Below, piece after piece: positions 1,877 through 64,000 of a stretch of 64,000 bases of DNA (position 1 is its first letter; every line of letters begins with the position of its first letter). Below the pieces are notes generated by a model. It ran no database searches. It had not been told where the DNA came from and saw nothing but the letters and a program-made list of their open reading frames with translations. Both the position numbers and the translations under genes were made by a program. The stretch is from IMG/VR virus record IMGVR_UViG_3300044632_001003, positions 1 through 64,000 of that record; one strand, given 5' to 3'.

Positions 1877-1897
1877 AGGTTTGATTCGTATGAAACC

Positions 1898-1955
1898 ATC
1901 ATACAAAAAAAGAGGGTGGTTAGACCCTCTTGTGTGCCAGTTTGGAAAGTGGTTC
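1898..1955 (-). promoter_or_regulatory. Promoter of the cassette class: TATGAT -10 (1903-1898) with palindrome-like site GAACCA-N10-TGGCAC (1955-1934) 30 bp upstream
   Basis: Direct reading; same spacing as the 59-64 kb cassette promoters. Confidence 0.6.
1905..1931 (-). terminator. Rho-independent terminator
   Basis: 8-bp stem AAGAGGGT/ACCCTCTT, 6-nt loop, T-tract on the minus strand, downstream of ORF 1954..2328. Confidence 0.75.
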
Positions 1956-2328
1956 AGACACCTTCAATAATGGACTTCTTCCACTCTTCACTCATATTTG
2001 CCATAATAGCAAGAGCTGCCTTATTGTTATCAGCATAACCTTCGGCAACTAGATGCTCAAGAATGAAGTCGAAGAGGTCGGCACTCTCTTTCATTTCCTT
2101 TTCAGTTTCTTTACCTTCCTTTTCAGTTACCTTTTCACCCTTCTCTTCTTTACCTTTAGGGTGCTTACCTTCTTTATGCTTTCCACCTTCGTCTTTTCCA
2201 GATTCACCTTTTTCAGACTCGCCTTTTTCAGACTCCTTCTTTTCACCAGATTCAATTTCTACTTCTTCTTTCTTTTCGTAGATAGAAGAATATGCCTCTA
2301 AAAGGTCTTTAACTTGCTTTACTTCCAT
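1954..2328 (-). CDS. Hypothetical late protein, E/K/G low-complexity linker; possible internal head protein
   Basis: ORF track; late promoter ATAAATA at 2355-2349; N-terminal LLEAYxxIYE and C-terminal DFILEHLVAEGYA motifs shared with the neighbouring ORF; 14-nt direct repeat at 2207-2235. Confidence 0.75.
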   Translation of the reverse strand: MEVKQVKDLLEAYSSIYEKKEEVEIESGEKKESEKGESEKGESGKDEGGKHKEGKHPKGKEEKGEKVTEKEGKETEKEMKESADLFDFILEHLVAEGYADNNKAALAIMANMSEEWKKSIIEGV

Positions 2329-20226: not shown

Positions 20227-21657
20227 TTAGTAAATCTCCCTCCACTGAAGAGCAGCAGCAACGCTAGCAGTGGCATTACCAGTAGTAGTGATGGTTCTTA
20301 CAACAAGCACATAAATTTCAGAGTTTGATGAATCTATATTTTGAACAATAATATTTTTCTTTGCCTGACTTAACGTACCAGAAGCAACTGGTGAAAGTGA
20401 GTTTTGTGATGCACCAGAAGGAACATAACCAGATGCAAAAACATCACCATTATTGTAAGTTGTTGCATTAATACAAAACTCAACACCACTATTATCAGAA
20501 GCAGAAGTCCAAGTTAAAGTTCCCGCATTACTCAAATAAGCAGAACTTGGAAGTTTTATAACTTTATAAACAATACTATTTGTTTCACAGAATAATGAAA
20601 TATTATTCAATTTAACTGATATTCTATTTGGATATCCCTGAAAAATATTTTTGAGACGAATGGCAACCAAAGGAAGTTCTGTTCCTGCTGGTGTTGGTGT
20701 GGTTCTTGTAGCAGTCATTGTATAAGCAAAGTCAATACCACTTTCTACATATCCACCTTCTGACATTACAGAAGAACAAATCTGATCAAATGATGCTCCA
20801 ATACCTACACCAGTATTTCGGAGTTCGCAACGAACTGGTAGGTTTGGATTTGCAATATAAACTGTGCTCTGATAGTTGGAATGGTTGAATTCGTGTGCGG
20901 TGATGAGTTGTCCATTATGAGCAAATCCACAACGAACTCTACCAACACCTAACCACTGAAAATCTATAAATGCAAGTTGAGTTTTTGTAATATCTAAATT
21001 GAACCCAGAAGTTCCCGTTCCATCACATTTATCTCTGTTCCATTGTGATTGTGGAATCCTGGTTTCGGTTGCAATACCACTTACAAAAGTTCTGATTACC
21101 CAATTGTTTGTTCCAATACCAGTATTTATTCCATCAGAAGTATTAAGACCCACCTGTTCAAAATAAATTCCGTCTCTATCATCAAAATATCCAGTTCTTT
21201 TAGTTGCATTTCGTTGAGGAGCATAGAAGTTAAAAGAACTAAAAATTAGTTGTCCTTTTCCTGGTTGATAGTGATGATAAAACTTCGTTTGATGAACACT
21301 AAATGCAGTTGTTCCAATACCAGTTTGTAATCTTGCACACGCTTGGTTTTGCAAAAATGATACTGTTGAACCTGCACCAGAAACACTATCCAAAAAGTTT
21401 GGGTCAATAGCATATAAGTGCTTGTAGTCGCCAAGAGTAAATGGTTCAGAAACTCTACTCCTACCAAATGCATCAACAGCATTTGTATCTGGGTTGATAG
21501 TAATAAGAGTATCTGATGAAATTCCAACAGTTCCAGTAACTGGAAATGGGTTGTCAAGTGTAACTACCTCGCCATTTTTATTGGCGATCATATTAACTTC
21601 AAAAAGAGTTCTCTCTTGATTTAAAAAATCTTGAGTACTTTTATTAAATTGTGCCAT
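20227..21657 (-). CDS. Beta-rich probable virion protein
   Basis: ORF track; G/T/S/N-rich composition; lies between genes 16 and 17. Confidence 0.7.
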   Translation of the reverse strand: MAQFNKSTQDFLNQERTLFEVNMIANKNGEVVTLDNPFPVTGTVGISSDTLITINPDTNAVDAFGRSRVSEPFTLGDYKHLYAIDPNFLDSVSGAGSTVSFLQNQACARLQTGIGTTAFSVHQTKFYHHYQPGKGQLIFSSFNFYAPQRNATKRTGYFDDRDGIYFEQVGLNTSDGINTGIGTNNWVIRTFVSGIATETRIPQSQWNRDKCDGTGTSGFNLDITKTQLAFIDFQWLGVGRVRCGFAHNGQLITAHEFNHSNYQSTVYIANPNLPVRCELRNTGVGIGASFDQICSSVMSEGGYVESGIDFAYTMTATRTTPTPAGTELPLVAIRLKNIFQGYPNRISVKLNNISLFCETNSIVYKVIKLPSSAYLSNAGTLTWTSASDNSGVEFCINATTYNNGDVFASGYVPSGASQNSLSPVASGTLSQAKKNIIVQNIDSSNSEIYVLVVRTITTTGNATASVAAALQWREIY

Positions 21658-21660
21658 AAA

Positions 21661-21969
21661 TCACTGACCCCAAGACAATCTCTCTGGTTGATATCTTTGT
21701 GCGTTTTTAATTCTTGAAGTATTTACCTGATTTGGATAAACGTTATGAACGATTGCTCCAGGATATTCTCCTTGGATTTGTTCTGCAAGTTCATTTTTGG
21801 GAAGCATCTTGCCTTCCACTTCCAAACGATACATCTTCCCTTCCCAAACAACGTCGGCAAAGAAAGACTCGGTTGCTTGTTCTGGTTGAGAGGAACCTAC
21901 ATTTAGAGTTCCATTGAAATCACCATTGATAGTGATACTTTCTGAAATAAATTGTTGAAAAGATTTCAT
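21661..21969 (-). CDS. Hypothetical protein with N-terminal capsid-targeting-like sequence
   Basis: Starts MKSFQQFISE, resembling the T4 IPIII CTS MKTYQEFIAE. Confidence 0.7.
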   Translation of the reverse strand: MKSFQQFISESITINGDFNGTLNVGSSQPEQATESFFADVVWEGKMYRLEVEGKMLPKNELAEQIQGEYPGAIVHNVYPNQVNTSRIKNAQRYQPERLSWGQ

Positions 21970-21970
21970 T

Positions 21971-24019
21971 TTAGTTACAGTTCCAACGACGTAGTGCTTT
22001 GTTAATTCTTGAATCTGGGTCTCTTGCAGTTTTTGCAGAAGTCAGTTTTGATTTCATGCCTTTCATTCGACGGCAGAAGTTAGCACGGCGTTTCGCTCTT
22101 TTACCTTTTGGTTTCTTCTCAGTTACTGCAGTCTGAAGTTTTGAACCAGGATTCTCACGACGATAAGCATCTACTGCTGCTTGACTCAATCCATCAGTTT
22201 TATCCTGACGATTGACTTTCTGCCAATCTTCCATAAACTGTTGGAAGGTTTTTAAGTCTGGTTCATAATGTGCAACCTGCATCTCTTTTTTAGGTTCTTT
22301 TTTAGCAAGTGGTGAATTGATTCCTTGTCTAATCTGTTGATATTTTTGATCTATTTTTCCAGCAGCACCAGGATTCCCTTGCTTCAGTCTATCAACATCT
22401 TGTGGAGTCATTCCACCCATACCTGTTGTCTTTTTACCACCAATTTCAAAACTAGGACCTTCACCAAGTAAGTCACTACCAATACCTTTAGTTGGTTTTA
22501 ATGGTTCTGGTTTGATGATATCAATAAACTCTGCGTAATGATTTCCATTAGCATCTTCAATAGATACGCTCTCCTTATTCATTTCACCACTATCAACATA
22601 ATCTGCTGCAGTGTCGATGTAATCAGCTGCTTTTGTAATCTTTGACTGAACCCATGCTTCTATCTCACCTTCACCTTTCTTCATTTTTTTCTTAAGTCTA
22701 TTTGCAGCCTTAATGATTGTTGAAAGTTCTGAACGAGCCATTGAATACTCGTGGTCATAGGCTTCATTAGCAGGATGGACCGTTGCAATATTAAATTTTT
22801 CTTGATTTGATGGTTCGTATGGTATTGAAAACATGGACCAATATTTTGGACCATATCTGCACTCACGCATCTTTTCCATTTTTTTGCACTTTGGACAATA
22901 TCTCATTTCATTTTCAAAAATTGGACCATCCCAATCATATGCAAGTGCATTAGTACTCTCTGATTTTGTTCCCCAGTTATCAGCACCTTTTTTGCGGCAT
23001 TGAACAAGTGCTCCAGATGCATATGCACTTGGCCAAACCTTAAATCTTGCTTTTACTTTGTGATAACAGGCATCTTTGTTACCACTACCTTTGCCTGGTT
23101 TATCTTTCGATGCTTCGTTGAGTTCCATTGCTTCTTTGATTCCTGGTTCTGCTTTGACGTAATTTTTATCTTTTTTGCCTTTAGCAAAAGTTGGAACATT
23201 TGTTGGTTTTGCTGCTCCAGATTTTTGTTGCTGCCCCTTATCTTTTTGACGCTTACGGCGAATTGCTGATCTAATTAACGCTTCACCTTTTTTACCTTTT
23301 TTCTTTAAAGACTTTAATCTTCCGCTACTAAAACATTTAGGAGTTTTAGTTTCACCTGGTTCATTTGCACATGGAGAACCATCTGCCTGAACCCATCCTG
23401 GTTTTCCACTTTTAGATTTGGAACCTTTAAACCAATGGTGAAGGGTTCCTTCATTAATCCAATCATCTGGAGTTTTTTGATGCTTATCAACAAATGCATT
23501 ATGCAATTGTTTAGCAGTCATATCATGCTTTTTCATAATTTTTCTCATGAGACCATCAATAGAATCATAAGAAGTATCATCTAATTTTTTTAATCCTGAT
23601 TCGAGTTCTTCAACAGCATCATCCTCACAACCACAATGCTCCTTTACATCTTTAAATTTCTTATGATGTTTTTTAGCATCTGCCTCCATTTTTTTCAAAC
23701 GAGTATAATAATCTGGAATTTCATCTAGATGCTGAAGAGCAATATCTGTTGCAAGATCTTTATCCTTTGTGTGTTCATGCTCGATTGGAATTCCCATTTC
23801 AAGTTGCTTTTTTATAAAAGAAACTTCAAGGCGATGTTTCTTTGCAATTTGTTCAACTGTCTTATGGGACTTTACTTCGTGCATTTCATTGAATGGAGAT
23901 TCGGATTTAGTCTCTTCACCACGTTGTCTTTTTTTACGAGCAGCACAATGAGCCTTTTGAGAAAATCCACTAGGATTATCACAATTTATTGATCTTTTAT
24001 ATTTGTCAGACCAACTCAT
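21971..24019 (-). CDS. Modular basic protein, probable internal head (poly)protein
   Basis: Distinct modules: EHEHTKDKDLATDIALQHLDEIPDYY, WVQADGSPC, DACYHKVK...WPSAYASG, NPGSKLQTAV...ALRRWNC; late-like promoter CTAAATA at 24049-24043. Confidence 0.75.
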   Translation of the reverse strand: MSWSDKYKRSINCDNPSGFSQKAHCAARKKRQRGEETKSESPFNEMHEVKSHKTVEQIAKKHRLEVSFIKKQLEMGIPIEHEHTKDKDLATDIALQHLDEIPDYYTRLKKMEADAKKHHKKFKDVKEHCGCEDDAVEELESGLKKLDDTSYDSIDGLMRKIMKKHDMTAKQLHNAFVDKHQKTPDDWINEGTLHHWFKGSKSKSGKPGWVQADGSPCANEPGETKTPKCFSSGRLKSLKKKGKKGEALIRSAIRRKRQKDKGQQQKSGAAKPTNVPTFAKGKKDKNYVKAEPGIKEAMELNEASKDKPGKGSGNKDACYHKVKARFKVWPSAYASGALVQCRKKGADNWGTKSESTNALAYDWDGPIFENEMRYCPKCKKMEKMRECRYGPKYWSMFSIPYEPSNQEKFNIATVHPANEAYDHEYSMARSELSTIIKAANRLKKKMKKGEGEIEAWVQSKITKAADYIDTAADYVDSGEMNKESVSIEDANGNHYAEFIDIIKPEPLKPTKGIGSDLLGEGPSFEIGGKKTTGMGGMTPQDVDRLKQGNPGAAGKIDQKYQQIRQGINSPLAKKEPKKEMQVAHYEPDLKTFQQFMEDWQKVNRQDKTDGLSQAAVDAYRRENPGSKLQTAVTEKKPKGKRAKRRANFCRRMKGMKSKLTSAKTARDPDSRINKALRRWNCN

Positions 24020-24031
24020 TGAAAAAACACA

Positions 24032-24445
24032 TTACTCTTTATTATTTAGAAAACCTTGTTTAAGTAGTTTTGACAAATCGGCAGTTGATCCAACAAATAG
24101 TGCATTATTGTTAGTAACATTTGTTGTTTTAACCTTATCTTCTTCTACTTCCTTAAGTTTCTTTTGAAGGTCAATCAACTTATCAGTTGTATCAGCAACA
24201 CTTTTAATGAGTTGTCCAGCAACTTCATATGCCCTAGGACTACCACCTTCTCCCGCAAGCTCCATAATGCCATTGATGGCCTCTTGACCTTTTTCAATCA
24301 AAGAATACAAATTGGCACGAGTATATTCATAATCTTTTTTAATATCATCTTTATTTCCACCAACAATTTCAACATCTGTTGGTTGTTTTTCAACGATGCT
24401 AGAATCTGTATTAAAGGTCAAATCTAAATTTTCATATCCAGGCAT
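24032..24445 (-). CDS. 16: Terminase small subunit gp16
   Basis: DYEYTRANLY, SPRAYEVAGQL, NNALFVGSTADL. Confidence 0.92.
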   Translation of the reverse strand: MPGYENLDLTFNTDSSIVEKQPTDVEIVGGNKDDIKKDYEYTRANLYSLIEKGQEAINGIMELAGEGGSPRAYEVAGQLIKSVADTTDKLIDLQKKLKEVEEDKVKTTNVTNNNALFVGSTADLSKLLKQGFLNNKE

Positions 24446-24451
24446 GATATT

Positions 24452-25297
24452 TTATACATCTCCACCTTGAACAATATTGTATCTTCTAGAGTCTGTAAAG
24501 AATTCCGTTGTCTCTGAGAATCCAAAGTCATCATCTGGTCCAAGAAGTGCATCATCAATTTGTGTTATGACTCCATCATTGTTCAGATCTTCAAGTGCCT
24601 TTGGAGTGACAGTATATCTCATTTCCCTCTTAGCAGAGGTTGTATTTGTACCACTATATGTATCAACTTGAACTTTTCTGATAAGACCGTCTGTTGTATC
24701 GGAAATGGCACCAAACAGATATGTTTTAACAGTAAATGATAGTGTATAAATTAAAGCTCTTCTTGTACTGAAATCACCTTCATAATCATCTGTAAATGAA
24801 ACATTATTCAGAATGATTGGCATATCTCTTTTTTCTCCAATTGAATCCACTAAGTCAATTGTTAGATTCAATGCTGGTTGAAAGCATGGTAAAATTTGCT
24901 CAACGATTTGAAGAGCATCATCATTTAGTTTGCAATAAATTGATAAATCGAATCCAATATTATATGGAACTGGCATAAAAACTTTCTTCAAATTAGTTCC
25001 ATCAGAAGCTTTAAATGATTGGGTTACGCCTGCTTTTCTACTTGCATCATAACTTAGAGAAACCATTTCAAATGACATTCTTGGTAGAGTCATTGCAATT
25101 GGTTTATTCAATTCCGATTGCTCAGTCAATCTAGCAAGAAACTTTTGTCTAGGACCATATGATAAAGGAACTCTAAGTTCATCAACTACATTAACATCAT
25201 TTTTATCATAATGCCTAATGTAAATTTGATTAAACAGGGTTCCAAATCCTATAATAGTTTTTCTAATAATTTCGTGATAATAGTAAGTACCTAACAT
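24452..25297 (-). CDS. 15: Tail sheath stabiliser/completion gp15
   Basis: YYYHEIIRKTIIGFGTLFN, VPLSYGPRQKFL, LPRMSFE, EQILPCFQP. Confidence 0.95.
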   Translation of the reverse strand: MLGTYYYHEIIRKTIIGFGTLFNQIYIRHYDKNDVNVVDELRVPLSYGPRQKFLARLTEQSELNKPIAMTLPRMSFEMVSLSYDASRKAGVTQSFKASDGTNLKKVFMPVPYNIGFDLSIYCKLNDDALQIVEQILPCFQPALNLTIDLVDSIGEKRDMPIILNNVSFTDDYEGDFSTRRALIYTLSFTVKTYLFGAISDTTDGLIRKVQVDTYSGTNTTSAKREMRYTVTPKALEDLNNDGVITQIDDALLGPDDDFGFSETTEFFTDSRRYNIVQGGDV

Positions 25298-28200
25298 TAG
25301 TAATTTCCAAATGGATTCGATTCTGAGAAGTCTATAATTTGATCTGCTTCAAATTCAATTTCATCATTTTCTTCATAGTCATCTAAGTTTCTCAATGAAG
25401 CTGCAGCAGGAACTTCGCTGAGAGTTAAATATTCATCAACAACATATATAGCCGATGAAGCGGCGCCAACTAAAAGTTCGCCAGGAACAAACTTGCCATT
25501 TTCAATAGAAATCTGAATAATCCTATCATCAGCATCCCAACGCTTAACCCTTGCAGTGGTGCTTGAAATTGATCCAGTCACAACTTCATTAAACCAATAC
25601 GTACCAACTCCAATGATTACTGGAGGTGATCCAATCGTAACCGTTGGTGGTGATTGATATCCAGAACCTGGGTCATCAATCAAGATATAATCAATTTCAT
25701 TAGTAACAGAATTCAATACCGCTCTTCCTCTTGCAGTTGTAAATCCAGCGGTAAAGTCTCTATCTGTTACAGTATTTGCAATGCTTACCGTAGGAGCAAC
25801 TGTGTATCCAATACCTGGTTTTGTGATGACAACAGAAGTTATAGTGCCACTGACTCCAACAACGCCATAACCTTCTGGAATTTGTCCAAGAGGTCCAGAA
25901 ATAGTTACTGAAGGTGTTGCCGTATATCCAAGACCAGGATTTGTTATTAAAATCTGATTCAGTCTTCCTGAAGATCTTAGGTTTGCAATAGCAGTTGCTC
26001 TAAAGTTTGAACCAACTCCAGTTGGACCAGATACAGTTACATTTGGATTGGTTAGGTATCCATATCCACCATAAGTTAGAGTTACTGAAGTAAGAACTCC
26101 AGACGTGACGCTTGCTATTCCAGTTGCTCTGAAATCTGAAGGTGTTCCTGTTGGCGCTTCAATTGCAGCAGAAACAATTGATGTTACAATACCAGAAAGA
26201 GTAGTACTATTATTATCTAGAGATATTACTCTTCCGTTTGATATTGAGCATCCAATACTAATTGAATTCAATGTTCCAATACTATTTTCAAAATCATCAA
26301 ATAATACTGTATTGGAGTTTGGAACTGGAGTGGATGTTGGAACTGCAGATGTTCCTGTCGAAACCTTTGTCCCAAAAATATCGTCCAATAAAATTCCACT
26401 ATTTGTAGAATTTTTAATAACGGGTGGAGTTATATCTGCATTTGTTACCAGTTCAATAACAGTTACTGTTGGGAATGAGTATCCGCTAGTATCTGTTCCA
26501 TCAACGGTAAGTGTAACTGTCTGTACTGGAGGTGGATCATAGTCAGATGATAAGTATAGATAATGCCAAGTATCGTCAAGAGCATAGACATTTGAAGTTA
26601 ATGATATTGTTCCGATACCAACTTCAAAATATCCTGAAGAATTAACTCTCATATCAACATTGTTAGCATACCCACCATTGGATAATCTGTTCAGTTCTAT
26701 GAAAGTTGAAACACCTGATAATGTAGATGGAACTTTAACAAACATTTGAATAGAACCAGTTATTCCAATAGAGACGACACCTGCTCCAGAAATTGCTGGT
26801 CTAGTAATATTTCTATTCGGTTCTGTTGAAATTATTTTCCAAGAATTTGAACCAAATTTTGGTTGATTGACAAATCCAGGACTTAATACTAAGAAATCAA
26901 TATTTAATGATGGCTCAGTTGTATAGTACCTACCTGAGCTCAATAGTGAATATGAAATTGTAGATATACCACCAGATGAGACTAGTGAAGAAGATACTCT
27001 GGCAGTTGATGCTATACCTGTAGGGTTATCAAAGGTTAATGTTGGATTTGTGATGTAGAATTGTCCAGAAGATGCTATCGAAATGCTAGAGACAGTCTCT
27101 CCATAAACTAGCCCACCAACTGCGATAACTGTTGCAGTTGATCCAACTCCTGTTGGACTATCAATTGTAATAGTTGGAGCCTGACTATATCCTATACCAA
27201 TATTTGCAATATTAAATGAGGATAACTGCTCATTTTGAATATTTGCAGTGGCAATTGCCGTTACAAAACCAATTGGATTTGGGGGACTAAAAGTAACTCC
27301 TATACTTAGTTTTGGAGAGTAACTAGAACCACCATTATTAATTACTACTCTATCTAACGCTGTGTCTGCTATAACTGCGGTTCCTGCTGCACCAATAAAT
27401 GTGGGACCAGAGAAAGTAACACTTGGTGATGTGGTGTATCCTTGCCCACCAGAAGTTACAGGCACAAAAGATACCCCCTTTCGATAAACATCTATAGAGC
27501 AAGTTGCTGCCGCACCCGTACCACCTCCACCGCTAATTGTTATAGTAGGTATTGAAGTATATCCCCAACCAGCGTCTTTTAATACAATTTCTTTGATTGA
27601 ACGGACTCCAGCAACTGAAGTTGTAATTGCAACTGCTTGTGCAGTTCTTCCGAATGCAGGAGCATTAGAAAATGTTACAGTTGGAGTCGATGTATATCCA
27701 TATCCATCATTATTCAAATAGATTTTTCTAACATAATTGCTGTTTATATCTGCACCAAGAACTGCTGTTTGACCATAACCCACTAATCTGAGTGATAGAA
27801 TTTCTCCTTGATTTGCGATTACAGCATCTACATCTTCATTACCAGTATCAAAGACTTCATTCTCATATTCAAAGAGTTCGCATGATAACTCATACACATA
27901 ACCTTTTCCAAGTTGATAAAATGGTTTTTCATGCTCAACAAATTTAACTTCAAATAATCTTTGACCAAGTGGAAAATAAATTACATCACCTTCTCTAGGT
28001 CTTAAAGCTACTTCTACTTCATATGCATCTTCTTCCTGTAAAAATGGACTAATAAATTCTTCAAATCTTTCTCTTGAAATAACTAAATTCAATTCATCCT
28101 TTAAACTCATCCCAAATTTAGTTAAAATATCTCCAGCACCAGTATATCCCTCATAATTATTTACATATGCTTCTAGTAAATAAGAATCATCGAATTTTGA

Positions 28201-58708: not shown

Positions 58709-58881
58709 TGAGAAGAGATTGTGAATTCTTCATAACTTAAGTCCTCTACATTATACTCTGTTTGAATCAATCCGACCATATGTGTTAAGGTACTCCAAGT
58801 TGAAGAAAAGTCCTCTTCCGCCACCGAATCAAACAAACACTTATCCTTAGCGTAGATACGATATCTTTTTAGATTAGCCAT
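58705..58881 (-). CDS. Hypothetical protein, 58 aa
   Basis: Hand-translated MANLKRYRIYAKDKCLFDSVAEEDF...; overlaps the upstream stop. Confidence 0.65.
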   Translation of the reverse strand: MANLKRYRIYAKDKCLFDSVAEEDFSSTWSTLTHMVGLIQTEYNVEDLSYEEFTISSH

Positions 58882-59053
58882 TTTTTGCGTCTTCTGTAAT
58901 GATTAACTCATTCCCTTCGATAGTTAATCTTACAGAAGTATCTTCATACCACTCCAATTCATTAACTACAGATTCTGGTAAAGTGATATAATATTCTCCC
59001 GTAATTGGATCGACCTGTACAGACTGAAAATTTTCCGCGAAATTTTTTTTCAT
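58874..59053 (-). CDS. AbrB/MazE/SpoVT-like DNA-binding protein, 59 aa
   Basis: Hand-translated; swapped-hairpin pattern YYITLPESVVNELEWYEDTSVRLTIEGNELII. Confidence 0.7.
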   Translation of the reverse strand: MKKNFAENFQSVQVDPITGEYYITLPESVVNELEWYEDTSVRLTIEGNELIITEDAKNG

Positions 59054-59240
59054 CTCATGTAAATTGATTCCTAATTTTCATTTATATAGGAATCGATAGA
59101 TCTCTCGCGTTTTCAAAGTTTTGTAGGTTAGGGGGACCCATTGATTTTATATAGGGGGGGGGTAACGCTTAACGCGCCCGCGAGGGCGCACCCCCCGCGC
59201 AGGGGGACTGCTGCCCCACGCACGAACGCACAGGGGGGCG

Positions 59241-59432
59241 TCACCGCCACTGCACCCCCCGCCCCTCATCAGCGTGTGCCTCAGCGTACTGGGCGGCGAT
59301 GGTGGTGGCGGGCAGTCCCCAGTGAATGTAGGAGGAGGGGCGGGAACCGTTCTTCAACTGGTCAGCGCGGGAGATCCATTTGATTTGGCGGGTCTCCAGG
59401 TCAGAGCACATGGCGAGCGGGAAGATGGTCAT
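59241..59432 (-). CDS. Cassette gene A, hypothetical 63 aa
   Basis: Start MTIFPL set by the cassette leader; -10 TACACT at 59461-59456. Confidence 0.7.
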   Translation of the reverse strand: MTIFPLAMCSDLETRQIKWISRADQLKNGSRPSSYIHWGLPATTIAAQYAEAHADEGRGVQWR

Positions 59433-59493
59433 GGGGTGTCGGTTGAACTGCTGATAGTGTAGCACGTACCGTGGCACACGAACGGGGTAGGGG

Positions 59494-59682
59494 TCAATAC
59501 CCCAACCACACCAGGAACTCACCCGTATCGACAGGACCGAAGCGGGCGGTCACCCCATAGTCGGTGCGGAAGTCATCCCACAGACCGTGCTCCTTTGCTG
59601 CCTGGCAGGCGGTGCTCCAGGGGATGGTCCCGTTGCTGGGGTCGGTGCAGTTCCAGAGGATGTCGGAGAATGTGGCGTTCAT
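59494..59682 (-). CDS. Cassette gene B, hypothetical 62 aa
   Basis: ORF track; TACAAT plus leader. Confidence 0.75.
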   Translation of the reverse strand: MNATFSDILWNCTDPSNGTIPWSTACQAAKEHGLWDDFRTDYGVTARFGPVDTGEFLVWLGY

Positions 59683-59721
59683 CGGGTCGGTTGGTTGAAC
59701 TGAGAGAATTGTAGCACGGGG

Positions 59722-60069
59722 TCAGACGGCACACCAGGCACAGTAGCGGTCGGCGTAGACCTGCTCCAGGCGGTACGCTTCGGATTCGCGGGCGTCGTCG
59801 TCGTGGTTGCCCTCCAGGGATTGGCGGCAGTGAATCAACTCATGGATCAGGGTGGTGACATACTCCAGATGGGGCAGGTCGCGCTCAACATCAATCAGGA
59901 ACTCATGAGCATCCTCCTGCTGCTGCCACCCCACCACACCCTCAGCGTTCAGGCGGCGATGATGGACGGTGACGGTAGCAGCGCCCAGGAGCGGTTCCTG
60001 ATCCAGCATGAAGCGATAGACCTGCTGGGCGAGGCGGGGGCGTTGCTTCTGTCCTGAGGTGAGCAGCAT
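59722..60069 (-). CDS. Cassette gene C, minimal zincin metallopeptidase
   Basis: TLIHELIHCRQ (HExxH) with downstream ESEAY third-ligand motif. Confidence 0.75.
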   Translation of the reverse strand: MLLTSGQKQRPRLAQQVYRFMLDQEPLLGAATVTVHHRRLNAEGVVGWQQQEDAHEFLIDVERDLPHLEYVTTLIHELIHCRQSLEGNHDDDARESEAYRLEQVYADRYCAWCAV

Positions 60070-60113
60070 GGGTCCGTTGCGGTTGAGAGTATTCTACAGG
60101 GTCGCCGCGGCCA

Positions 60114-60320
60114 TCAGGCGGGCAGGCAGTGCCAGTTGATCCATTGACCCTTGCTGCCCTTGCTGTTCCACAGGAGCGACAGAATCTCACGGCGCGATGC
60201 CACGTAGCGGTAGCAGGTCGTGGGGCTGTTGAACCAGCGGACGCGAACGCTGCCCGTGATGGGGTTGGCGCTCAGGCTCCAGACGCTGGTGGAATCGTTG
60301 CAGTTGATGGGGTAGCGCAT
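60114..60320 (-). CDS. Cassette gene D, KTSC-like domain protein
   Basis: DSTSVWSL...VRVRW...YRY...LL....SKGQWIN pattern; start MRYPIN set by the leader. Confidence 0.55.
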   Translation of the reverse strand: MRYPINCNDSTSVWSLSANPITGSVRVRWFNSPTTCYRYVASRREILSLLWNSKGSKGQWINWHCLPA

Positions 60321-60360
60321 CGGGTCGGTTGCTTTGAGAGTATTGTAGCAGGTCGGGGGC

Positions 60361-60528
60361 TCACTGCCCGTTGGTGTAGTCTCCGATGATGATGCCCGTC
60401 TCATTGTGGCGGACCTGGGCGTAACCGAATTCCTCAGACAGGGAGAGGCAGAGGTCCCAGGCGCGGTCCTCATCGGTGGTGGTGTTCTCCCAGGGAGCGG
60501 AGGGGCAGATCACGTCGTAGCGGGTCAT
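60361..60528 (-). CDS. Cassette gene E, hypothetical 55 aa
   Basis: Hand-translated MTRYDVICPSAPWENTTTDEDRAWDLCLSLSEEFGYAQVR...; TATACT plus leader. Confidence 0.75.
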   Translation of the reverse strand: MTRYDVICPSAPWENTTTDEDRAWDLCLSLSEEFGYAQVRHNETGIIIGDYTNGQ

Positions 60529-60596
60529 GGGTCGTTTGCTTGTGTCCCCATAGTATAAGACCCCCAGCGGCGAACCGTGGGGGGCAGTGGTCAGAT

Positions 60597-60740
60597 TCAG
60601 AATTGGATGGGTTCGGCAGTCGGTTCGGCGTCACCCTCCTGGGCGATGCGTTGGCCGTCTGCCAGTCCGTCCAGGATGCTCAGAATCTGGGAACCGTTGC
60701 GACCCTGGCGGAGCAGGGAGAGGGCAAGGTCAAGGGTCAT
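60597..60740 (-). CDS. Cassette gene F, hypothetical 47 aa
   Basis: Hand-translated MTLDLALSLLRQGRNGSQILSILDGLA...; TACAAT plus long leader. Confidence 0.7.
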   Translation of the reverse strand: MTLDLALSLLRQGRNGSQILSILDGLADGQRIAQEGDAEPTAEPIQF

Positions 60741-60803
60741 GGGTCGTTTGAATCAGTGTGGTTTGGTGTGGGTGTCTTTCAGGGCGCACCCGCTCCCATT
60801 GTA

Positions 60804-60980
60804 TCAGGCAGCGATCAGCAGGTCATCCTCCCAGCGGGCAGTGGTCAGAATCTCATCGTAGATCCGATCGGCAACCTGATCAACGTAGCGGCGCTCATCC
60901 GCTTTCAGGATGGCAGCGCGGCACTGGGCGGCAATCTCATCAATGCTCAGGGCGCGGTCGGTGGCGGGGTTGTAGCGCAT
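60804..60980 (-). CDS. Cassette gene G, hypothetical 58 aa
   Basis: Hand-translated MRYNPATDRALSIDEIAAQCRAAIL...; the stop is immediately followed by the next TACAAT. Confidence 0.75.
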   Translation of the reverse strand: MRYNPATDRALSIDEIAAQCRAAILKADERRYVDQVADRIYDEILTTARWEDDLLIAA

Positions 60981-61049
60981 GGGGTTCGTTTGAACTGAGA
61001 ATATTGTAGAGCAGTTTAGGGTCGGTGCTCAGGACATTGTGCCAGTGCC

Positions 61050-61232
61050 TCAGGCGGCACAGAGGGCGGATTCCAGGCAGACCTCCCGCACTTCCAGGCG
61101 GGAGTAATCATAGAGACCCCGCTGCAGCTCCAGTTCATAATCCTCAGCGGTGGAGCGGCAATCGAACAGGCGCAGGGAATCGAAGTCGGTGCCTTCATAA
61201 TCCCAACCACCGATCACAGCATAGACTTTCAT
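61050..61232 (-). CDS. Cassette gene H, hypothetical 60 aa
   Basis: Start MKVYAVIGGWDYEG set by the leader. Confidence 0.75.
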   Translation of the reverse strand: MKVYAVIGGWDYEGTDFDSLRLFDCRSTAEDYELELQRGLYDYSRLEVREVCLESALCAA

Positions 61233-61305
61233 GGGCGGGTCGTTTGAACTGAGAGTATTGTAGGGGATGGAGGTGGGGGGTTGGTGCCCCCCGTGTGCCA
61301 GTGCC

Positions 61306-61482
61306 TCAATCGGCATAGAGGGAGATGAAGTCCTCCACAAACTCCCGCGCCTCATCGCCTGACATGCGGGAGATCATCTCACGGGCGACGGTCTCCCAGG
61401 AGAAGTCGTCTGCCAGGTCAAAGATGGCGACCCGTGCCTCAGAGGCGGAGAGTTCGGAGGCGGTGATCTGGGCGTAGGTCAT
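61306..61482 (-). CDS. Cassette gene I, acidic helical 58 aa
   Basis: Start MTYAQIT set by the leader. Confidence 0.75.
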   Translation of the reverse strand: MTYAQITASELSASEARVAIFDLADDFSWETVAREMISRMSGDEAREFVEDFISLYAD

Positions 61483-61522
61483 GGGGTTGTCTGAACTGAG
61501 AGTATTGTAGGGGGTCAGGGGG

Positions 61523-61711
61523 TCAGAATCCTGCCTGCTGTTCCAGTTCCTCAAGTGTCACACGGTTCCAGGCACTGAACAGGGTAACGTGATCCAGGAC
61601 GCGGCCCATCGTCTCAGGACCAGTCTGGGGGTCGTCCAGGACCTGATCCATGCCAATGCTCATCAGGCGGTGGATCACGGCGTAGGTCTCCTGGCTGATG
61701 GTGATCTCCAT
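61523..61711 (-). CDS. Cassette gene J, hypothetical 62 aa
   Basis: Start MEITISQ; TATAAT plus leader. Confidence 0.7.
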   Translation of the reverse strand: MEITISQETYAVIHRLMSIGMDQVLDDPQTGPETMGRVLDHVTLFSAWNRVTLEELEQQAGF

Positions 61712-61753
61712 AGGGTCCGTTGCGGTTGATCCTATTATAGGGGGTGGCACCCC

Positions 61754-61993
61754 TCAGAATGCCACCAGTTGGTCCAGATCCCATTGTGGCACAGTCTGGA
61801 CGGTGCCCCCGCAGTTCTTCCGCAACCATGCGTTGATGTGCTTGCTGGTGGTGGCGCTCCACTGCTGGGCGGTGCGGATCCAACCCTTGCCAGGCACCAG
61901 GGCGGCAACGGGAGTCACGTAGGAGAACAGGATGCAGGTCCCGTCTGCCAGTTGAACCTCAGTCTGGTTGCTGCCGATCTGTTGAACGATCAT
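61754..61993 (-). CDS. Cassette gene K, conserved phage hypothetical 79 aa
   Basis: GSNQTE...LFSYVTPVAA...WSATTSKHINAWL; leader present. Confidence 0.8.
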   Translation of the reverse strand: MIVQQIGSNQTEVQLADGTCILFSYVTPVAALVPGKGWIRTAQQWSATTSKHINAWLRKNCGGTVQTVPQWDLDQLVAF

Positions 61994-62026
61994 GGGGTTC
62001 CTTCGAACTGAGAGTATTGTAGCAGG

Positions 62027-62242
62027 TCAGCGGCGGGCAGCGGCTAGCAGCAGGTCCAGTAGGACAACTGCCACAACCGCCTTCCAAAAGCCCAGGGCGG
62101 TGATTCCAAACCACCCCAGCACCAGCACCAGGAGCCACGCTTTCAGGGCAACGACGCCAGCGACGCCAACGATCAGGATACCTGCCAGAGCCACCATCTG
62201 CGGGGTGCTGAGGTCCTCAATCCAGGGGTAACGCTTGCTCAT
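62027..62242 (-). CDS. Cassette gene L, small membrane protein
   Basis: Almost entirely hydrophobic, at least 2 TM segments; leader present. Confidence 0.75.
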   Translation of the reverse strand: MSKRYPWIEDLSTPQMVALAGILIVGVAGVVALKAWLLVLVLGWFGITALGFWKAVVAVVLLDLLLAAARR

Positions 62243-62311
62243 GGGTGCCTTGCGGTTGAGAGTATTGTAAGGGGTCAGCGGTGCCCTTTGGGGCAGGGAG
62301 TGGACAGTGCC

Positions 62312-62470
62312 TCAGGTGTCCTCATCCTCCCCCAGAATGAACCCATCAACCCATCCTGCTGTGTATCCGTCATCTTTGGTGAACAGGCGGATCTTAAGAA
62401 GTTTGGCGATTGCAAAGGGCAAACCGATCACCAGGGCTCCAGGGATGAGAATGGCAAGCAGTTCGGTCAT
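62312..62470 (-). CDS. Cassette gene M, single-TM protein with acidic tail, 52 aa
   Basis: Hand-translated MTELLAILIPGALVIGLPFAIAKLL...GEDEDT. Confidence 0.7.
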   Translation of the reverse strand: MTELLAILIPGALVIGLPFAIAKLLKIRLFTKDDGYTAGWVDGFILGEDEDT

Positions 62471-62503
62471 GGGGTTCCTTTGAACTGAGAGTATTGTAGC
62501 GGG

Positions 62504-62671
62504 TCAGCGGGCGATCAGGTCGCCTGCAGTGTACAGTGCCTGAGCTGTCACATGGCGGACGGGGCGAATCGGTTCCCATAGTATCCAGAGCAGCAGAGCG
62601 GCAACGGTCAGGCGAAGCATGGTAGCACGGTGGAACTCAGGGGAACGGGAACGGGTCAGGGAGCGGATCAT
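62504..62671 (-). CDS. Cassette gene N, single-TM protein, 55 aa, coupled to gene O
   Basis: MIRSLTRSRSPEFHRATMLRLTVAALLLWILW...; ATGA overlap with gene O. Confidence 0.65.
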   Translation of the reverse strand: MIRSLTRSRSPEFHRATMLRLTVAALLLWILWEPIRPVRHVTAQALYTAGDLIAR

Positions 62672-62811
62672 GCGATGTGAGCAGGGGAACCACAGGAACG
62701 GTAGAATTCTACCATACGTTCCGCCTCTGCCAGGGTGGGGAACCATTGCGACCGCCACTCACAGTGGTTGTAGGGGACCTGGTAGCGGACTTCGTAGCGG
62801 GTCAGTGCCAT
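62668..62811 (-). CDS. Cassette gene O, hypothetical 47 aa
   Basis: Hand-translated MALTRYEVRYQVPYNHCEWRSQWFPTLAEAERMVEFYRSCGSPAHIA. Confidence 0.75.
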   Translation of the reverse strand: MALTRYEVRYQVPYNHCEWRSQWFPTLAEAERMVEFYRSCGSPAHIA

Positions 62812-62968
62812 GGGTCAGTTGAAAGACTTTGGGGTGGCGGGTCCGTGACCTCCCGCCTACGGGGTCAAGGGGTCTGTGGGGTTGCCCCCGCCGTTCCTCC
62901 CCTTGTTGAACATAGTATGGCACGGCAGAGGGGGCAGGTCTATGGGGTGTGTGCCACATTCTGAACTG

Positions 62969-63553
62969 TCACAGCACCTCTTTGCCGAACTTGCCACACA
63001 GGTAGAATGCCATTCCTTTATCTTTCAGGGTGCAACCTGCAAAGGTGAGAGGAACATAGGCGCCGTTAGTTTTAGATGCTTTGGTGCGAATTTGCAGCAG
63101 TCCGTTAGGACCAGTGATGGTGCTCAGTTGCTCACCAGCATTGAACTTAGCACGAATGGTATCACAAATGTGGTTGTAATCCTCCGCCAGTTCCTGATAG
63201 TGTTCGGGGTGAGTTTCAGGGTTCAGAACCTCAGTGCCCACATAATCGTTGGAGCGGGTGAAACCAACGTAGATGGTTTGAGAGAGTTTCTCACCGACTT
63301 TGCTGTCAGCGAAACTAACACTATCCTCCAGAATCTCAGAGAGGCAATGCTTCAGTTGGGTGACAGCGATAGACTCACCAACCGTGAAGGTCTTCAGTTC
63401 TCCATCCACCAGATCTTTCAGGTTGGAACTGTTAGGAATGCCCAGGGCAGTTTCAATCAGTTGCCCACGGGATCCTTTGTTCTTCCCAGGTTTGGCGAAC
63501 GCAGCGAAGTTAGTTACCTTCAGTTGGGCAGCGACTTGCAGGGTGTTGAGCAT
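62969..63553 (-). CDS. Cassette gene P, MutH/Sau3AI-like PD-(D/E)xK endonuclease
   Basis: NKGSRGQLIETALGI...DLVDGELKT, LQIRTK; start MLNTLQ set by the leader. Confidence 0.7.
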   Translation of the reverse strand: MLNTLQVAAQLKVTNFAAFAKPGKNKGSRGQLIETALGIPNSSNLKDLVDGELKTFTVGESIAVTQLKHCLSEILEDSVSFADSKVGEKLSQTIYVGFTRSNDYVGTEVLNPETHPEHYQELAEDYNHICDTIRAKFNAGEQLSTITGPNGLLQIRTKASKTNGAYVPLTFAGCTLKDKGMAFYLCGKFGKEVL

Positions 63554-63619
63554 CGGGTGCGTTGCTGATGAGATTAGTATAGGGCACCAGGGGCACCCCA
63601 CAAGGGGGTCTGTGCCACT

Positions 63620-64000
63620 TCAACGATTGGCACACTGGAAGCGACCGCTGTTGAAGTTAGCGTTAGAAAAGACCTCACGATTCACCAGTTTGAACATACC
63701 AAACTGATTCACCAGAACGTAACCCTCAGCGTCGATTCTGTTACCGTACAGATAAGCAGCAGGACCATCATTGCGGCAGAGGAACAGGCAGTCATCTTTG
63801 ATAGACTTCACCAATGCCCACAGACGCAGCAGGTTAGCATCACAATCAAAGTCCTCAGGATTCACCTCTTCACCAGCACGAATGCAGGCATTGATCTGTT
63901 GTTTGATCTTTGCCGCTTCCTTCTCACTCACAAAGGTGGCAGTTTGTGCCATCTGACGGGCGAACTTGCACACCTCTTCAACATCAGCGAACGACTCCTG
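63620..64000 (-). CDS. 3' part of a conserved cyanophage hypothetical protein (5' end outside window)
   Basis: The frame stays open to the window edge; C-terminal EGYV...FKLVNREVFSNANF. Confidence 0.7.
   Translation of the reverse strand, partial: QESFADVEEVCKFARQMAQTATFVSEKEAAKIKQQINACIRAGEEVNPEDFDCDANLLRLWALVKSIKDDCLFLCRNDGPAAYLYGNRIDAEGYVLVNQFGMFKLVNREVFSNANFNSGRFQCANR

What the first reader, a model, noticed from the sequence alone, without database searches (positions are those of the whole stretch)
60129..63633. Palindromic operator GTGCCA-N10-TGGCAC written into the last codons of each upstream gene
Minus-strand sites, 30-32 nt upstream of the -10: 63633 GTGCCA ATCGTTGAAG TGGCAC; 62972 GTGACA GTTCAGAATG TGGCAC; 62551 GTGACA GCTCAGGCAC TGTACA; 62322 AGGACA CCTGAGGCAC TGTCCA; 62074 GTGGCA GTTGTCCTAC TGGACC; 61792 GTGCCA CAATGGGATC TGGACC; 61561 GTGACA CTTGAGGAAC TGGAAC; 61316 ATGCCG ATTGAGGCAC TGGCAC; 61060 GTGCCG CCTGAGGCAC TGGCAC; 60150 GGGTCA ATGGATCAAC TGGCAC. 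Weaker copies are at 60609 and 60856, and none is clear for three units. The sites overlap coding sequence or stop codons of unrelated genes (VTLEELE, VPQWDLD, VAVVLLD, VTAQALY). The six -35 positions I checked lack TTGACA. Inference: a dimeric activator bound near -54 replaces the -35 (a different solution from T4 MotA), or the site is a recombination target. I do not recognise it as NtcA, CRP or RpaB.
Basis: partly seen in the sequence, partly recalled or inferred. Interest (0 to 1): 0.8.

Follow-up and report, generated by a model that had tools for sequence, protein, structure and literature searches.

The report
Conserved palindrome upstream of cyanophage promoters
The palindrome is real and under selection, and it is the local form of a 24-base element found at a fixed distance upstream of early-type promoters in many cyanobacterial viruses, probably the docking site of a still unidentified DNA-binding protein, most likely a host one.

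Summary
Confirmed. Ten of 15 small-gene promoter cassettes in a 60% GC island (about 59150-63650, minus strand) of a 33% GC T4-like cyanomyovirus carry GTGmCA-N10-TGkCAC, ending 29-32 nt before the -10. The full element is 24 bp: TGTGmCA-sTT-N4-AAs-TGkCACA. It is specific for spacer and position. Its half-sites change about three times more slowly than the spacer or the flanks, and it is read in all three frames, so it is a DNA signal. It shows no RNA-stem covariation.

It is not special to this window. The same palindrome lies 29-30 nt before a -10, 6-7 nt before a -35 where one exists, in over 100 viral and metagenomic contigs, in cultured cyanomyoviruses including Syn9, and 47 times in the early region of the unrelated Microcystis siphovirus Mic1.

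Best reading: an upstream promoter element centred near -54.5, bound by a dimeric protein. The binder is probably host-encoded, because Mic1 and the myoviruses share no regulator. In this island the element occurs where -35 and extended -10 are missing.

Recombination between cassettes is real (PeSL-like), but it breaks in the -10/leader core, not in the palindrome. A conserved early-gene element in T4-like cyanophages has probably been published (Doron 2016; I could not read it).

The parts
63611..63634 (-). 24-bp palindrome, unit 1 (18/20 to extended consensus). The stop codon of the DUF6267-family gene lies at motif position 13.
   Evidence: Half-sites are 12/12 conserved in orthologues of 76-81% identity (L003, L013) whose spacer differs at 6-7 of 10 positions.
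62950..62973 (-). 24-bp palindrome, unit 2 (19/20). The stop of the MutH-like gene lies inside the left half.
62529..62552 (-). Palindrome, unit 3 (14/20; right half TGTACA). The upstream ORF reads through it.
62300..62323 (-). Degenerate palindrome, unit 4 (12/20; arms GGACA/TGTCC). Stop TGA at motif position 10.
62052..62075 (-). Palindrome, unit 5 (15/20). Read through by a membrane-protein ORF.
61770..61793 (-). Palindrome, unit 6 (15/20). Read through.
61539..61562 (-). Palindrome, unit 7 (19/20). Read through.
61294..61317 (-). Palindrome, unit 8 (16/20). Stop TGA at motif position 10.
61038..61061 (-). Palindrome, unit 9 (17/20). Stop TGA at motif position 10.
60128..60151 (-). Palindrome, unit 13 (14/20). 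Read through in a third frame.
60834..60857 (-). Weak copy at the right offset (10/20).
60587..60610 (-). Weak copy at the right offset (10/20). A relative (L020) has TGGCAC here.
63557..63594 (-). Core promoter (-13 to -1, -10 TATACT) and leader of unit 1, ahead of the MutH-like gene.
62812..62930 (-). -10 (CATACT/TACTAT) and a 100-nt leader, unit 2.
62471..62511 (-). Conserved core (cTGACCcgc, TACAAT) and leader ACTCTCAGTTCAAAGGAACCCC, unit 3.
62243..62282 (-). Core and leader, unit 4. Also one junction of a cassette insertion or deletion relative to L009.
61994..62034 (-). Core and leader, unit 5. The other junction of the same insertion or deletion.
61712..61752 (-). Core (TATAAT) and leader, unit 6. 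One end of the joint 61507->61738 seen in metatranscriptome contigs.
61483..61522 (-). Core and leader, unit 7.
61233..61275 (-). Core and leader, unit 8.
60981..61021 (-). Core and leader, unit 9.
60741..60816 (-). Core and a long leader, unit 10 (no clear palindrome).
60529..60570 (-). Core (TATACT) and leader, unit 11.
60321..60360 (-). Core and leader, unit 12 (no palindrome).
60070..60109 (-). Core (TAGAAT) and leader, unit 13.
59683..59726 (-). Core (TG-extended TACAAT) and leader, unit 14 (no palindrome).
59433..59474 (-). Core (TG-extended TACACT) and leader, unit 15 (no palindrome).
59150..63000 (.). GC-rich (59-61%) hyperplastic island of small ORFs in a genome of about 33% GC. It sits at the same syntenic place, with a mosaic gene content, in related viral contigs.
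1933..1956 (-). One further palindrome of the same class outside the island (18/20). The upstream stop TGA lies inside its left half.
   Evidence: Syntenic with the Syn9 site at 127492.
1877..1932 (-). Hairpin with a T-run, then -10 TATGAT and a leader, ahead of a large gene that starts at 1876.

Best explanation
The site is the upstream half of a composite promoter class used by cyanophages for genes transcribed by host RNA polymerase. Where expression has been measured (Mic1), these are early genes.

The element is a 24-bp dyad, TGTGmCA-sTT-N4-AAs-TGkCACA. Its proximal end lies 29-31 bp before the -10 hexamer, which is 6-7 bp before the -35 position, so its centre is near -54.5.

Shown:
- It is a DNA-level signal.
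- Its half-sites are under purifying selection.
- It keeps a fixed distance from the core promoter, on either side of itself.
- It is shared by unrelated cyanophage families.

Inferred:
- A dimeric DNA-binding protein sits on it and contacts RNA polymerase, in the manner of a class I activator, to boost initiation.
- The protein is most likely host-encoded and conserved among cyanobacteria.
- In this GC-rich island, where -35 and extended -10 elements are absent from exactly the promoters that carry it, it would supply the missing upstream contact.

The site overlaps the ends of the upstream genes only because genes here are packed one promoter cassette apart. The cassette itself brings TGA stops. 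The roughly 40-bp -10/leader core of the cassettes, not the palindrome, is where relatives have gained and lost genes by recombination (PeSL-like).
For: Position and spacer:
- Specific for position and spacer within the cassette family.
- Enriched in the window.
- Ten units show a constant 29-32 nt gap although the intervening sequence is unrelated.

Selection:
- Against diverged orthologues, half-site substitution is 4.8% and 5.4%, and 0/31 for the A that follows the right half. N10 shows 14.2%, the upstream coding flank 15% and the downstream spacer 17.9%.
- The motif is read in three frames, with stops inside or after it.

Not an RNA stem:
- The usual pair, left GTGACA with right TGGCAC, keeps an A.G clash.
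- Folding z-scores are mostly near 0.

Generality:
- 142 non-redundant viral-contig sites have -10-like hexamers peaking at +29/+30 (77 on one side, 39 on the other) and TTG at +7.
- 131 of 150 metagenome sites have a -10 at +27 to +33.
- Syn9 has about 8 clear sites, all ahead of genes on the coding strand.
- Several cultured cyanomyoviruses carry it.
- Mic1 has 47 sites, all in its early region. These include the promoters of gp69-73, reported as immediate-early, and of gp52 and gp59, reported as early (PMC11237433).

Host link:
- A Mic1 36-mer finds only cyanophages among 50,697 phage genomes.
- Mic1 shares only PhoH, Dam and NrdA with Syn9 or the window, and no regulator.

Compensation:
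- In the island family, cassettes with the motif have 0/22 TTG at -35 and 1/22 extended -10 TG. Cassettes without it have 11/43 and 30/43 (p = 2.5e-7).
Against: - No binding protein is identified and no transcription data exist for this phage. The RNA runs found hold only short contigs of relatives.
- Five of 15 units here, and 43 of 65 in the family, lack the site and presumably still work.
- The anticorrelation with the TG-extended -10 could partly reflect descent, because the -13 to -1 segment is inherited together with the palindrome.
- Two orthologues of unit 1 (L026, L041) have a 3-nt deletion in the spacer (N7) yet keep both half-sites.
- Mic1 has a second spacing class (16 nt before the -35) and long arrays with a 57-58 bp period that are not each next to a gene. 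That would suit a repressor or an architectural protein equally well.
- Half-site centres 16-20 bp apart are unusual for a simple dimeric helix-turn-helix protein.
Confidence: 0.6

Rival explanations
1. The site is an operator for a phage-encoded repressor that shuts the early promoters off (or autoregulates them) once the early proteins have been made. On this reading the dyad is a negative rather than a positive site.
For: - Multi-copy arrays in the Mic1 early region lie next to small DNA-binding genes (an XRE-like ORF in the Mic1-like contig L123, and KTSC proteins).
- In the window, a MazE/AbrB-like small gene lies directly beside the island at 58874-59053. Its Pfam PF04014 match has E = 7.9e-4, below the family cut-off. 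Its S-SRM01 homologue is annotated as DNA-binding.
- Mic1 immediate-early transcripts fall quickly after 0.5 h (PMC11237433).
Against: - A site centred at -54.5 does not overlap the core promoter, so simple occlusion is unlikely.
- The strict helical register with the -10 points to contact with polymerase.
- tblastn finds no regulator shared between Mic1 and the myoviruses.
- The site occurs preferentially on promoters that lack other recognition elements, which suits activation better.
Confidence: 0.2
2. The site is a recombination target: a site-specific or hotspot sequence at which gene cassettes are exchanged.
For: - The island is a mosaic of cassettes in related contigs.
- Whole-gene gains and losses exist: L009 lacks 62027-62242, and RNA-library contigs join 61507 to 61738.
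- PeSL authors speculated that their stem-loops might be recombinase targets (PMC2839356).
Against: - Homology breakpoints fall in the -10/leader core, about 45-70 nt downstream of the palindrome.
- The palindrome stays attached to the upstream gene.
- The same dyad precedes single conserved genes with stable synteny (window 1933-1956, Syn9 127492).
- Its fixed distance to the -10, on either side of itself, has no rationale for a recombination site.
Confidence: 0.07
3. The site is an RNA hairpin at the 3' end of the upstream message: a terminator, attenuator or stabiliser, like the stem-loop of PeSLs.
For: - Perfect copies can fold (unit 63581).
- The site lies at gene ends.
- Many cassettes of the family, and the site at 1933-1956, do have separate G-run/C-run hairpins between the dyad and the -10.
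Against: - There is no covariation. The usual combination, GTGACA with TGGCAC, places an A.G mismatch in the middle of a 6-bp stem.
- Most units fold no better than shuffles and do not pair the two halves.
- No U-tract follows the dyad.
- In Mic1 arrays and at the first promoters of clusters the site lies upstream of the start points.
Confidence: 0.04
4. The site has no function. The resemblance would be inherited from one ancestral cassette, or arise by chance in GC-rich coding sequence.
For: The cassettes are clearly related by descent: the core and leader are nearly identical.
Against: - The half-sites are conserved islands within a diverged spacer and diverged flanks.
- The same dyad and distance recur in low-GC marine phages and in Mic1, whose surrounding sequences are unrelated.
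- Shuffle controls exclude chance.
Confidence: 0.02

Closest known systems
PeSLs (promoter-early stem-loops) of T4-type phages (Arbiol et al. 2010, PMC2839356; Comeau et al. 2014, PMC4122927)
   Same: Both are repeated composite regulatory cassettes (upstream element, host-type promoter, leader, ATG) that lie between small ORFans in a hyperplastic region of a T4-like genome. In both, gene gains and losses between close relatives are bounded by the cassettes. Poly-G/poly-C hairpins are present in many cassettes of the family.
   Different: Most cassettes here have no -35 and no AT-rich UP region. The conserved dyad is not an RNA stem and lies further upstream than the PeSL stem-loop. It is also found outside shuffling regions and in a siphovirus. 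Mini-circles were not tested.
Class I activator sites of bacterial promoters (for example CRP centred at -61.5); established textbook knowledge
   Same: Both are dyad-symmetric sites upstream of the -35, at a fixed helical register. Both work in either orientation and occur on promoters with weak core elements.
   Different: The centre is at -54.5 (and about -63.5 in part of Mic1), not -61.5. The outer TGTG/CACA tetramers are 16 bp apart, against 6 bp between TGTGA and TCACA for CRP. No protein is known for this site.
The novel early-gene regulatory element of T4-like cyanophages reported for Syn9 and P-TIM40 (Doron et al. 2016, ISME J 10:1437). Recalled from its abstract; the paper is not held in the library.
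   Same: That element is said to control early genes and to be abundant and conserved among T4-like cyanophages and in metagenomes. The dyad found here is present ahead of small-gene clusters of Syn9 and is abundant in cyanophage contigs.
   Different: I could not compare the published logo with this one, so identity is likely but unverified. Three points may go beyond it: the extension to Mic1, the variant without a -35, and the embedding in coding ends.
T4 MotA box of middle promoters (Hinton 2010, PMC2988021)
   Same: Both are a phage promoter class in which an extra element accompanies a normal -10.
   Different: The MotA box is a non-palindromic 9-mer at -30 that replaces the -35 and needs the phage proteins MotA and AsiA. 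Cyanomyoviruses lack both (PMC2984593).
UP elements of strong bacterial and T4 early promoters (alpha-CTD sites, -40 to -60)
   Same: Both occupy the same region of the promoter. In low-GC phages the centre of the dyad is AT-rich.
   Different: UP elements are A/T tracts without dyad symmetry. Here the conserved positions are the G/C-containing arms.

Membership tests
PeSL (T4-type promoter-early stem-loop cassette) | Sigma-70-like early promoter with both -35 and -10 | tested here: not met
   The -10 TAnAAT is present in all 15 units. There is no information at the -35 position across 65 cassettes. Only 2 window units have a -35-like hexamer.
PeSL (T4-type promoter-early stem-loop cassette) | Stable stem-loop just upstream of the promoter that acts as a terminator | tested here: inconclusive
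   A G-run at -29 to -25 and a C-run at -16 to -9 are enriched in the family, and hairpins occur in some units. Most window units fold no better than shuffles, and the palindrome itself is not a stem.
PeSL (T4-type promoter-early stem-loop cassette) | Clustered between small ORFans in hyperplastic regions of T4-like genomes | tested here: met
   Fifteen cassettes lie in 4.2 kb between 47-195-aa ORFs, at one syntenic locus with variable content in relatives.
PeSL (T4-type promoter-early stem-loop cassette) | Insertions, deletions and replacements between close relatives are bounded by the cassettes | tested here: met
   L009 lacks window gene 62027-62242, with the junction in the -10/leader. 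Contigs join 61507 to 61738.
PeSL (T4-type promoter-early stem-loop cassette) | Formation of mini-circles by recombination between neighbouring cassettes | not testable with these tools
   Needs inverse PCR or long reads from phage DNA.
Class I transcription-activator site | Dyad symmetry with conserved half-sites and a free spacer | tested here: met
Class I transcription-activator site | Fixed distance and helical phase to the core promoter, upstream of -35 | tested here: met
   The gap is 29-32 nt in the window and peaks at 29-30 nt in 142 independent sites.
Class I transcription-activator site | A protein binds the site and raises transcription | not testable with these tools
The only evidence is indirect: the link to early genes in Mic1 (PMC11237433) and the anticorrelation with other promoter elements.
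CRP / NtcA (CRP-family) binding sites | TGTGA-N6-TCACA or GTA-N8-TAC geometry | tested here: not met
   The outer TGTG and CACA are 16 bp apart, and there is no GTA-N8-TAC.
Sigma-54 promoter (-24 TGGCAC / -12 TTGC) | GG-N10-GC with TGGCAC 5 nt before TTGC, close to the start point | tested here: not met
   TGGCAC is followed by unrelated sequence and lies 30 nt before a sigma-70-type -10. From general knowledge, cyanobacteria lack sigma-54.
Integron attC / other site-specific recombination sites | Crossover inside the conserved inverted repeat at the 3' end of each cassette | tested here: not met
   Breakpoints lie in the -10/leader core, and the palindrome stays with the upstream gene.
Cyanophage early-gene regulatory element (Doron et al. 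2016) | Match to the published early-promoter logo and to mapped early transcription starts of Syn9 | not testable with these tools
   The paper is not held. The dyad is present ahead of Syn9 gp55, 68, 73, 75, 78, about gp91, 150 and 183.

The most novel reading that the evidence does not exclude
The 24-bp dyad is the recognition site of a still unidentified DNA-binding protein common to cyanobacteria as distant as marine Synechococcus and Prochlorococcus, freshwater picocyanobacteria and Microcystis. The protein could also be a cyanobacteria-specific surface of RNA polymerase. Unrelated phage families (T4-like myoviruses and the siphovirus Mic1) have each recruited it to fire their first genes. 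It can stand in for both the -35 and the extended -10, which lets promoters be written into GC-rich coding ends.
Probability: 0.35. Interest if true: 0.7.

Novelty: new member of a known kind. Interest (0 to 1): 0.45.

Why it matters
T4-like cyanophages lack the T4 proteins Alt, Mod, MotA and AsiA (PMC2984593), so how they win the host polymerase for their first genes is unresolved. This element is short, highly specified and countable, and it marks such promoters in cultured and uncultured cyanophages from sea and lakes.

It has three practical uses:
- It gives a direct handle for DNA-affinity purification of the factor that binds it.
- It offers a way to annotate early genes in metagenomic phage contigs.
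- It provides a natural series of promoters with and without -35 and extended -10 elements for dissecting the mechanism.

The cassette array also extends PeSL-type modular shuffling to cyanophages.

Tried and rejected
- **Rfam and tRNA scans of the window:** no hits.
- **RNA hairpin or terminator reading of the dyad:** rejected. It shows no covariation and no folding excess.
- **Sigma-54, CRP, NtcA, RpaB (HLR1), LexA and MotA-box readings:** the geometry does not fit. The consensus sequences used for comparison come from general knowledge.
- **A hidden second sigma-70 promoter using GTGACA or TGGCAC as its -35:** no -10 at the right distance.
- **Host origin of the cassette:** a scan of 185,579 species genomes with the -10/leader core found only small, probably mis-binned MAG contigs and chance hits. 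No cyanobacterial chromosome was hit.
- **Plasmids:** nothing.
- **Transcript evidence:** no RNA run holds this DNA. Contigs of relatives are too short to show starts or ends.
- **Pfam and PHROG searches of island proteins for a DNA-binding candidate:** only unknown-function phage families, a MutH-like nuclease and an HExxH protein.
- **High-GC soil-type metagenome contigs with perfect dyads** (L220, L255 and others): no regulator next to them, and their number fits chance.
- **Literature:** seven of the nine full-text searches run, and several papers read, gave no description of this dyad. The three most relevant papers are not held: Doron 2016, Mann 2005 and Weigele 2007.

Full report
**What the window is.**
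Most of the 64 kb has about 30-40% GC. It aligns weakly with T4-like cyanomyoviruses (S-SRM01, S-CAM7, P-SSM2; baseplate wedge, SpeD and glycosyltransferase genes). From about 59150 to about 63000 the GC content jumps to 59-61%.

This island holds about 15 ORFs of 47-115 aa plus a 195-aa MutH-like gene, all on the minus strand. Each ORF is preceded by a nearly identical promoter/leader cassette: cTGACCcgc, then TACAAT, then ACTCTCAGTTCAAAsGAmCCCC, then ATG.

**The observation.**
Two more are weak and three are blank.

- The pattern is enriched in the window: 14 hits against 5.2 +/- 2.4, with 8 of them in the island.
- With an extended consensus the island has 7 hits against 0.16 in shuffles.
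- The cassette core retrieved 36 related viral contigs. In the resulting 65 non-redundant cassettes, strong matches occur only with a 10-nt spacer and only at offsets -54 to -52: 15 hits against 1 anywhere else in 120 nt.
- The dyad is one base longer on each side, TGTGmCA...TGkCACA.
- All 15 upstream ORFs end in TGA. The stop falls inside the dyad in four of the ten listed sites (motif positions 3, 10, 10, 13) and in one weak copy (position 12). In the other six listed sites the ORF reads through the dyad, in two different frames.

**Is it functional?**
I compared window units with diverged orthologous units in other contigs. The two hexamers differ at 4.8% and 5.4% of positions, and the following A at 0 of 31. 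The N10 differs at 14.2%, the upstream coding sequence at about 15%, the downstream spacer at 17.9% and the -10 at 7.8%.

For unit 63581, orthologues of 76-81% identity keep all 12 half-site bases while 6-7 of the 10 spacer bases differ.

The sequence between the dyad and the -10 is unrelated among units, yet its length stays at 29-32 nt. This argues for selection on the half-sites and on their distance to the promoter.

**Not an RNA stem.**
The usual left arm GTGACA and right arm TGGCAC would place an A.G mismatch in the middle of a 6-bp stem, and that combination is the conserved one. Minimum-energy folds of the 15 upstream regions are heterogeneous, and most are no better than shuffles. Rfam finds nothing.

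**Not the recombination point.**
The island sits at one syntenic place in many contigs but with mosaic content. Blocks of homology end at the -10/leader core. L009 goes directly from the gene ending at 62312, through its dyad and spacer, into a -10/leader and the homologue of the gene at 61993. It therefore lacks the whole gene 62027-62242.

Contigs from lake RNA libraries join 61507 to 61738, from one -10 to the next. The shuffled unit is therefore leader, ORF, dyad and spacer, exchanged through the roughly 40-bp conserved core.

This is the behaviour described for PeSLs of T4-type phages (PMC2839356, PMC4122927). However, the -35 and the AT-rich region of PeSLs are missing here, and the stem-loop is present only in some cassettes.

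**The dyad is widespread.**
- In 142 non-redundant sites, -10-like hexamers peak sharply 29-30 nt after the 24-mer: 77 on the TGGCACA side and 39 on the other side. TTG peaks at +7, the -35 position. The spacer reads S-T-T/C-nnnn-A-A-S.
There, 131 of 150 sites have a -10 at +27 to +33.
- Cultured cyanomyoviruses carry it: ACG-2014f with up to 11 places per genome, S-H9-1, ACG-2014h, S-IOM18 and, at weaker E-values, S-CAM22, S-SM1 and S-SSM4.
- In the complete Syn9 genome, clear sites precede gp55, 68, 73, 75, 78, about gp91, 150 and 183. All are on the coding strand, 29-31 nt before TATTCT, TATACT or TATAAT. Their leader (AGAGTCAAAGG) resembles the window's.
- The window has one further site outside the island, at 1933-1956. 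It is followed by a hairpin with a T-run, TATGAT and a large gene. It is syntenic with the Syn9 site after the gp46-like gene.
- The unrelated Microcystis siphovirus Mic1 has 47 sites, all between 57.3 and 72.1 kb. Gene-proximal copies are followed by 7 nt, T(G/A)GACA, 17 nt and CATAAT ahead of gp68-73. Copies ahead of gp51, 52, 59, 62, 64 and 66 lie 16 nt before TTGACA. Further copies form arrays with a 57-58 bp period.
- Transcriptomics has assigned Mic1 gp69-73 to the immediate-early cluster, and gp52 and gp59 to the early cluster (PMC11237433).
- A Mic1 36-mer finds only cyanophages among 50,697 phage genomes, and nothing relevant in plasmids.

**Mechanism.**
The features are:
- a dyad with 7-10 specified bases per arm;
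- an orientation-independent position;
- a fixed distance to the -10, giving a centre near -54.5 if transcription starts about 7 nt after the -10;
- an association with early genes where expression is known.

These fit a dimeric protein that contacts RNA polymerase from just upstream of the -35.

In the island cassette family the dyad and the other recognition elements are almost mutually exclusive. Of 22 cassettes with the dyad, none has TTG at -35 and one has a TG-extended -10. Of 43 cassettes without it, 11 have TTG and 30 have the TG (p = 2.5e-7). This looks like compensation. Shared descent of the -13 to -1 segment with the dyad may contribute, though.

Early promoters must fire in a freshly infected cell. 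Mic1 and the myoviruses share only PhoH, Dam and NrdA. A host-encoded binder conserved among cyanobacteria is therefore the simplest inference. I could not identify the binder. The geometry does not match CRP, NtcA, RpaB, LexA or sigma-54 sites as I know them.

A phage-encoded shut-off repressor remains a serious rival. Small DNA-binding genes lie beside the Mic1 arrays, and a MazE/AbrB-like gene lies next to the island.

**Novelty.**
From memory of its abstract, Doron et al. 2016 reported a novel regulatory element controlling early genes of Syn9 and P-TIM40, abundant and conserved among T4-like cyanophages. The dyad found here is very probably that element or part of it, but the paper is not held, so I could not check.

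Nothing in the searchable library describes the dyad.

I therefore file the finding as a new member of a known kind. It is a freshwater, GC-rich instance that mostly lacks a -35, is embedded in coding ends, and is arranged in a PeSL-like cassette array.

Three things may be new: its presence in Mic1, the anticorrelation with extended -10 and -35 elements, and the inference that the binder is a host factor.

Noticed in passing
window 59150-63000 (and the 50% GC stretch up to 64000): An island of about 4 kb with 59-61% GC lies inside a phage genome of about 33% GC. It sits at the same syntenic locus (between the SpeD/glycosyltransferase side and a DUF6267-family gene) in many IMG/VR contigs, each time with a different gene set. 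The source of the high-GC DNA is unknown. No cyanobacterial genome matched the cassette core.
   Followed up: partly
window 59433-63594, cassette cores: All 15 ORFs of the island end in TGA. The cassette carries conserved TGA triplets in different frames (cTGAggcac inside the dyad, G-TGA-CA in its left arm, gcTGAcc just before the -10). Any ORF recombined in front of a cassette is therefore soon terminated.
   Followed up: partly
window, leaders of about 19-25 nt before each ATG (for example 62471-62492); Syn9 (L175/L176): The leader ACTCTCAGTTCAAAsGAmCCCC is as conserved as the -10 and mostly lacks a Shine-Dalgarno sequence. Syn9 promoters of the same class have a similar leader (ATAAGAGTCAAAGG). 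It may be a conserved translation or RNA-binding signal.
   Followed up: no
window 61744-61765 (minus strand): A second palindrome with perfect arms, GTGGCA-N10-TGCCAC, lies directly against the -10 of unit 61739, in addition to the one at 61770-61793. It contains the stop codon of the upstream gene.
   Followed up: no
window 58874-59053 (minus) and 59080-59160: The first low-GC gene after the island encodes a 59-aa protein with a weak MazE/AbrB-type match (PF04014, E = 7.9e-4, below the cut-off). Its S-SRM01 homologue is annotated as DNA-binding. It is preceded by two T4-late-like TATAAAT motifs. It is a possible regulator candidate.
   Followed up: partly
window 59104-59152: A 49-nt stretch at the island border is 96% identical to an unannotated intergenic place in the marine Synechococcus phage S-BM3. 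It was the only megablast hit of the whole island among phage genomes.
   Followed up: no
window 62969-63556 (minus): A 195-aa protein of PHROG 15364 is shared with many marine cyanomyoviruses (68% identity to S-CAM7) and is annotated in one record as MutH. It looks like a MutH/Sau3AI-type nuclease. Pfam gives no hit.
   Followed up: partly
window 59722-60069 (minus): A 115-aa ORF with an HELIH motif has a weak match to a putative metallopeptidase family (DUF6782) and to PHROG 10499.
   Followed up: no
Mic1 MN013189 65.9-72.1 kb (L179 about 20900-27200); L123 690-2360: The dyad forms arrays of up to 6 copies with a 57-58 bp period. On the opposite strand each repeat carries TTGACA, 17 nt, then a weak -10 that overlaps the next dyad. 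These could be divergent or decoy promoters, or a nucleoprotein array.
   Followed up: partly
window 1877-1956 (minus): Outside the island the dyad is combined with a classical hairpin and T-run terminator squeezed between the dyad and the -10. This is the most PeSL-like arrangement in the window.
   Followed up: partly
L026 and L041, orthologues of unit 63581: Two relatives have a 3-nt (one codon) deletion in the spacer, giving N7 with both half-sites intact. This is an exception to the otherwise strict N10.
   Followed up: no
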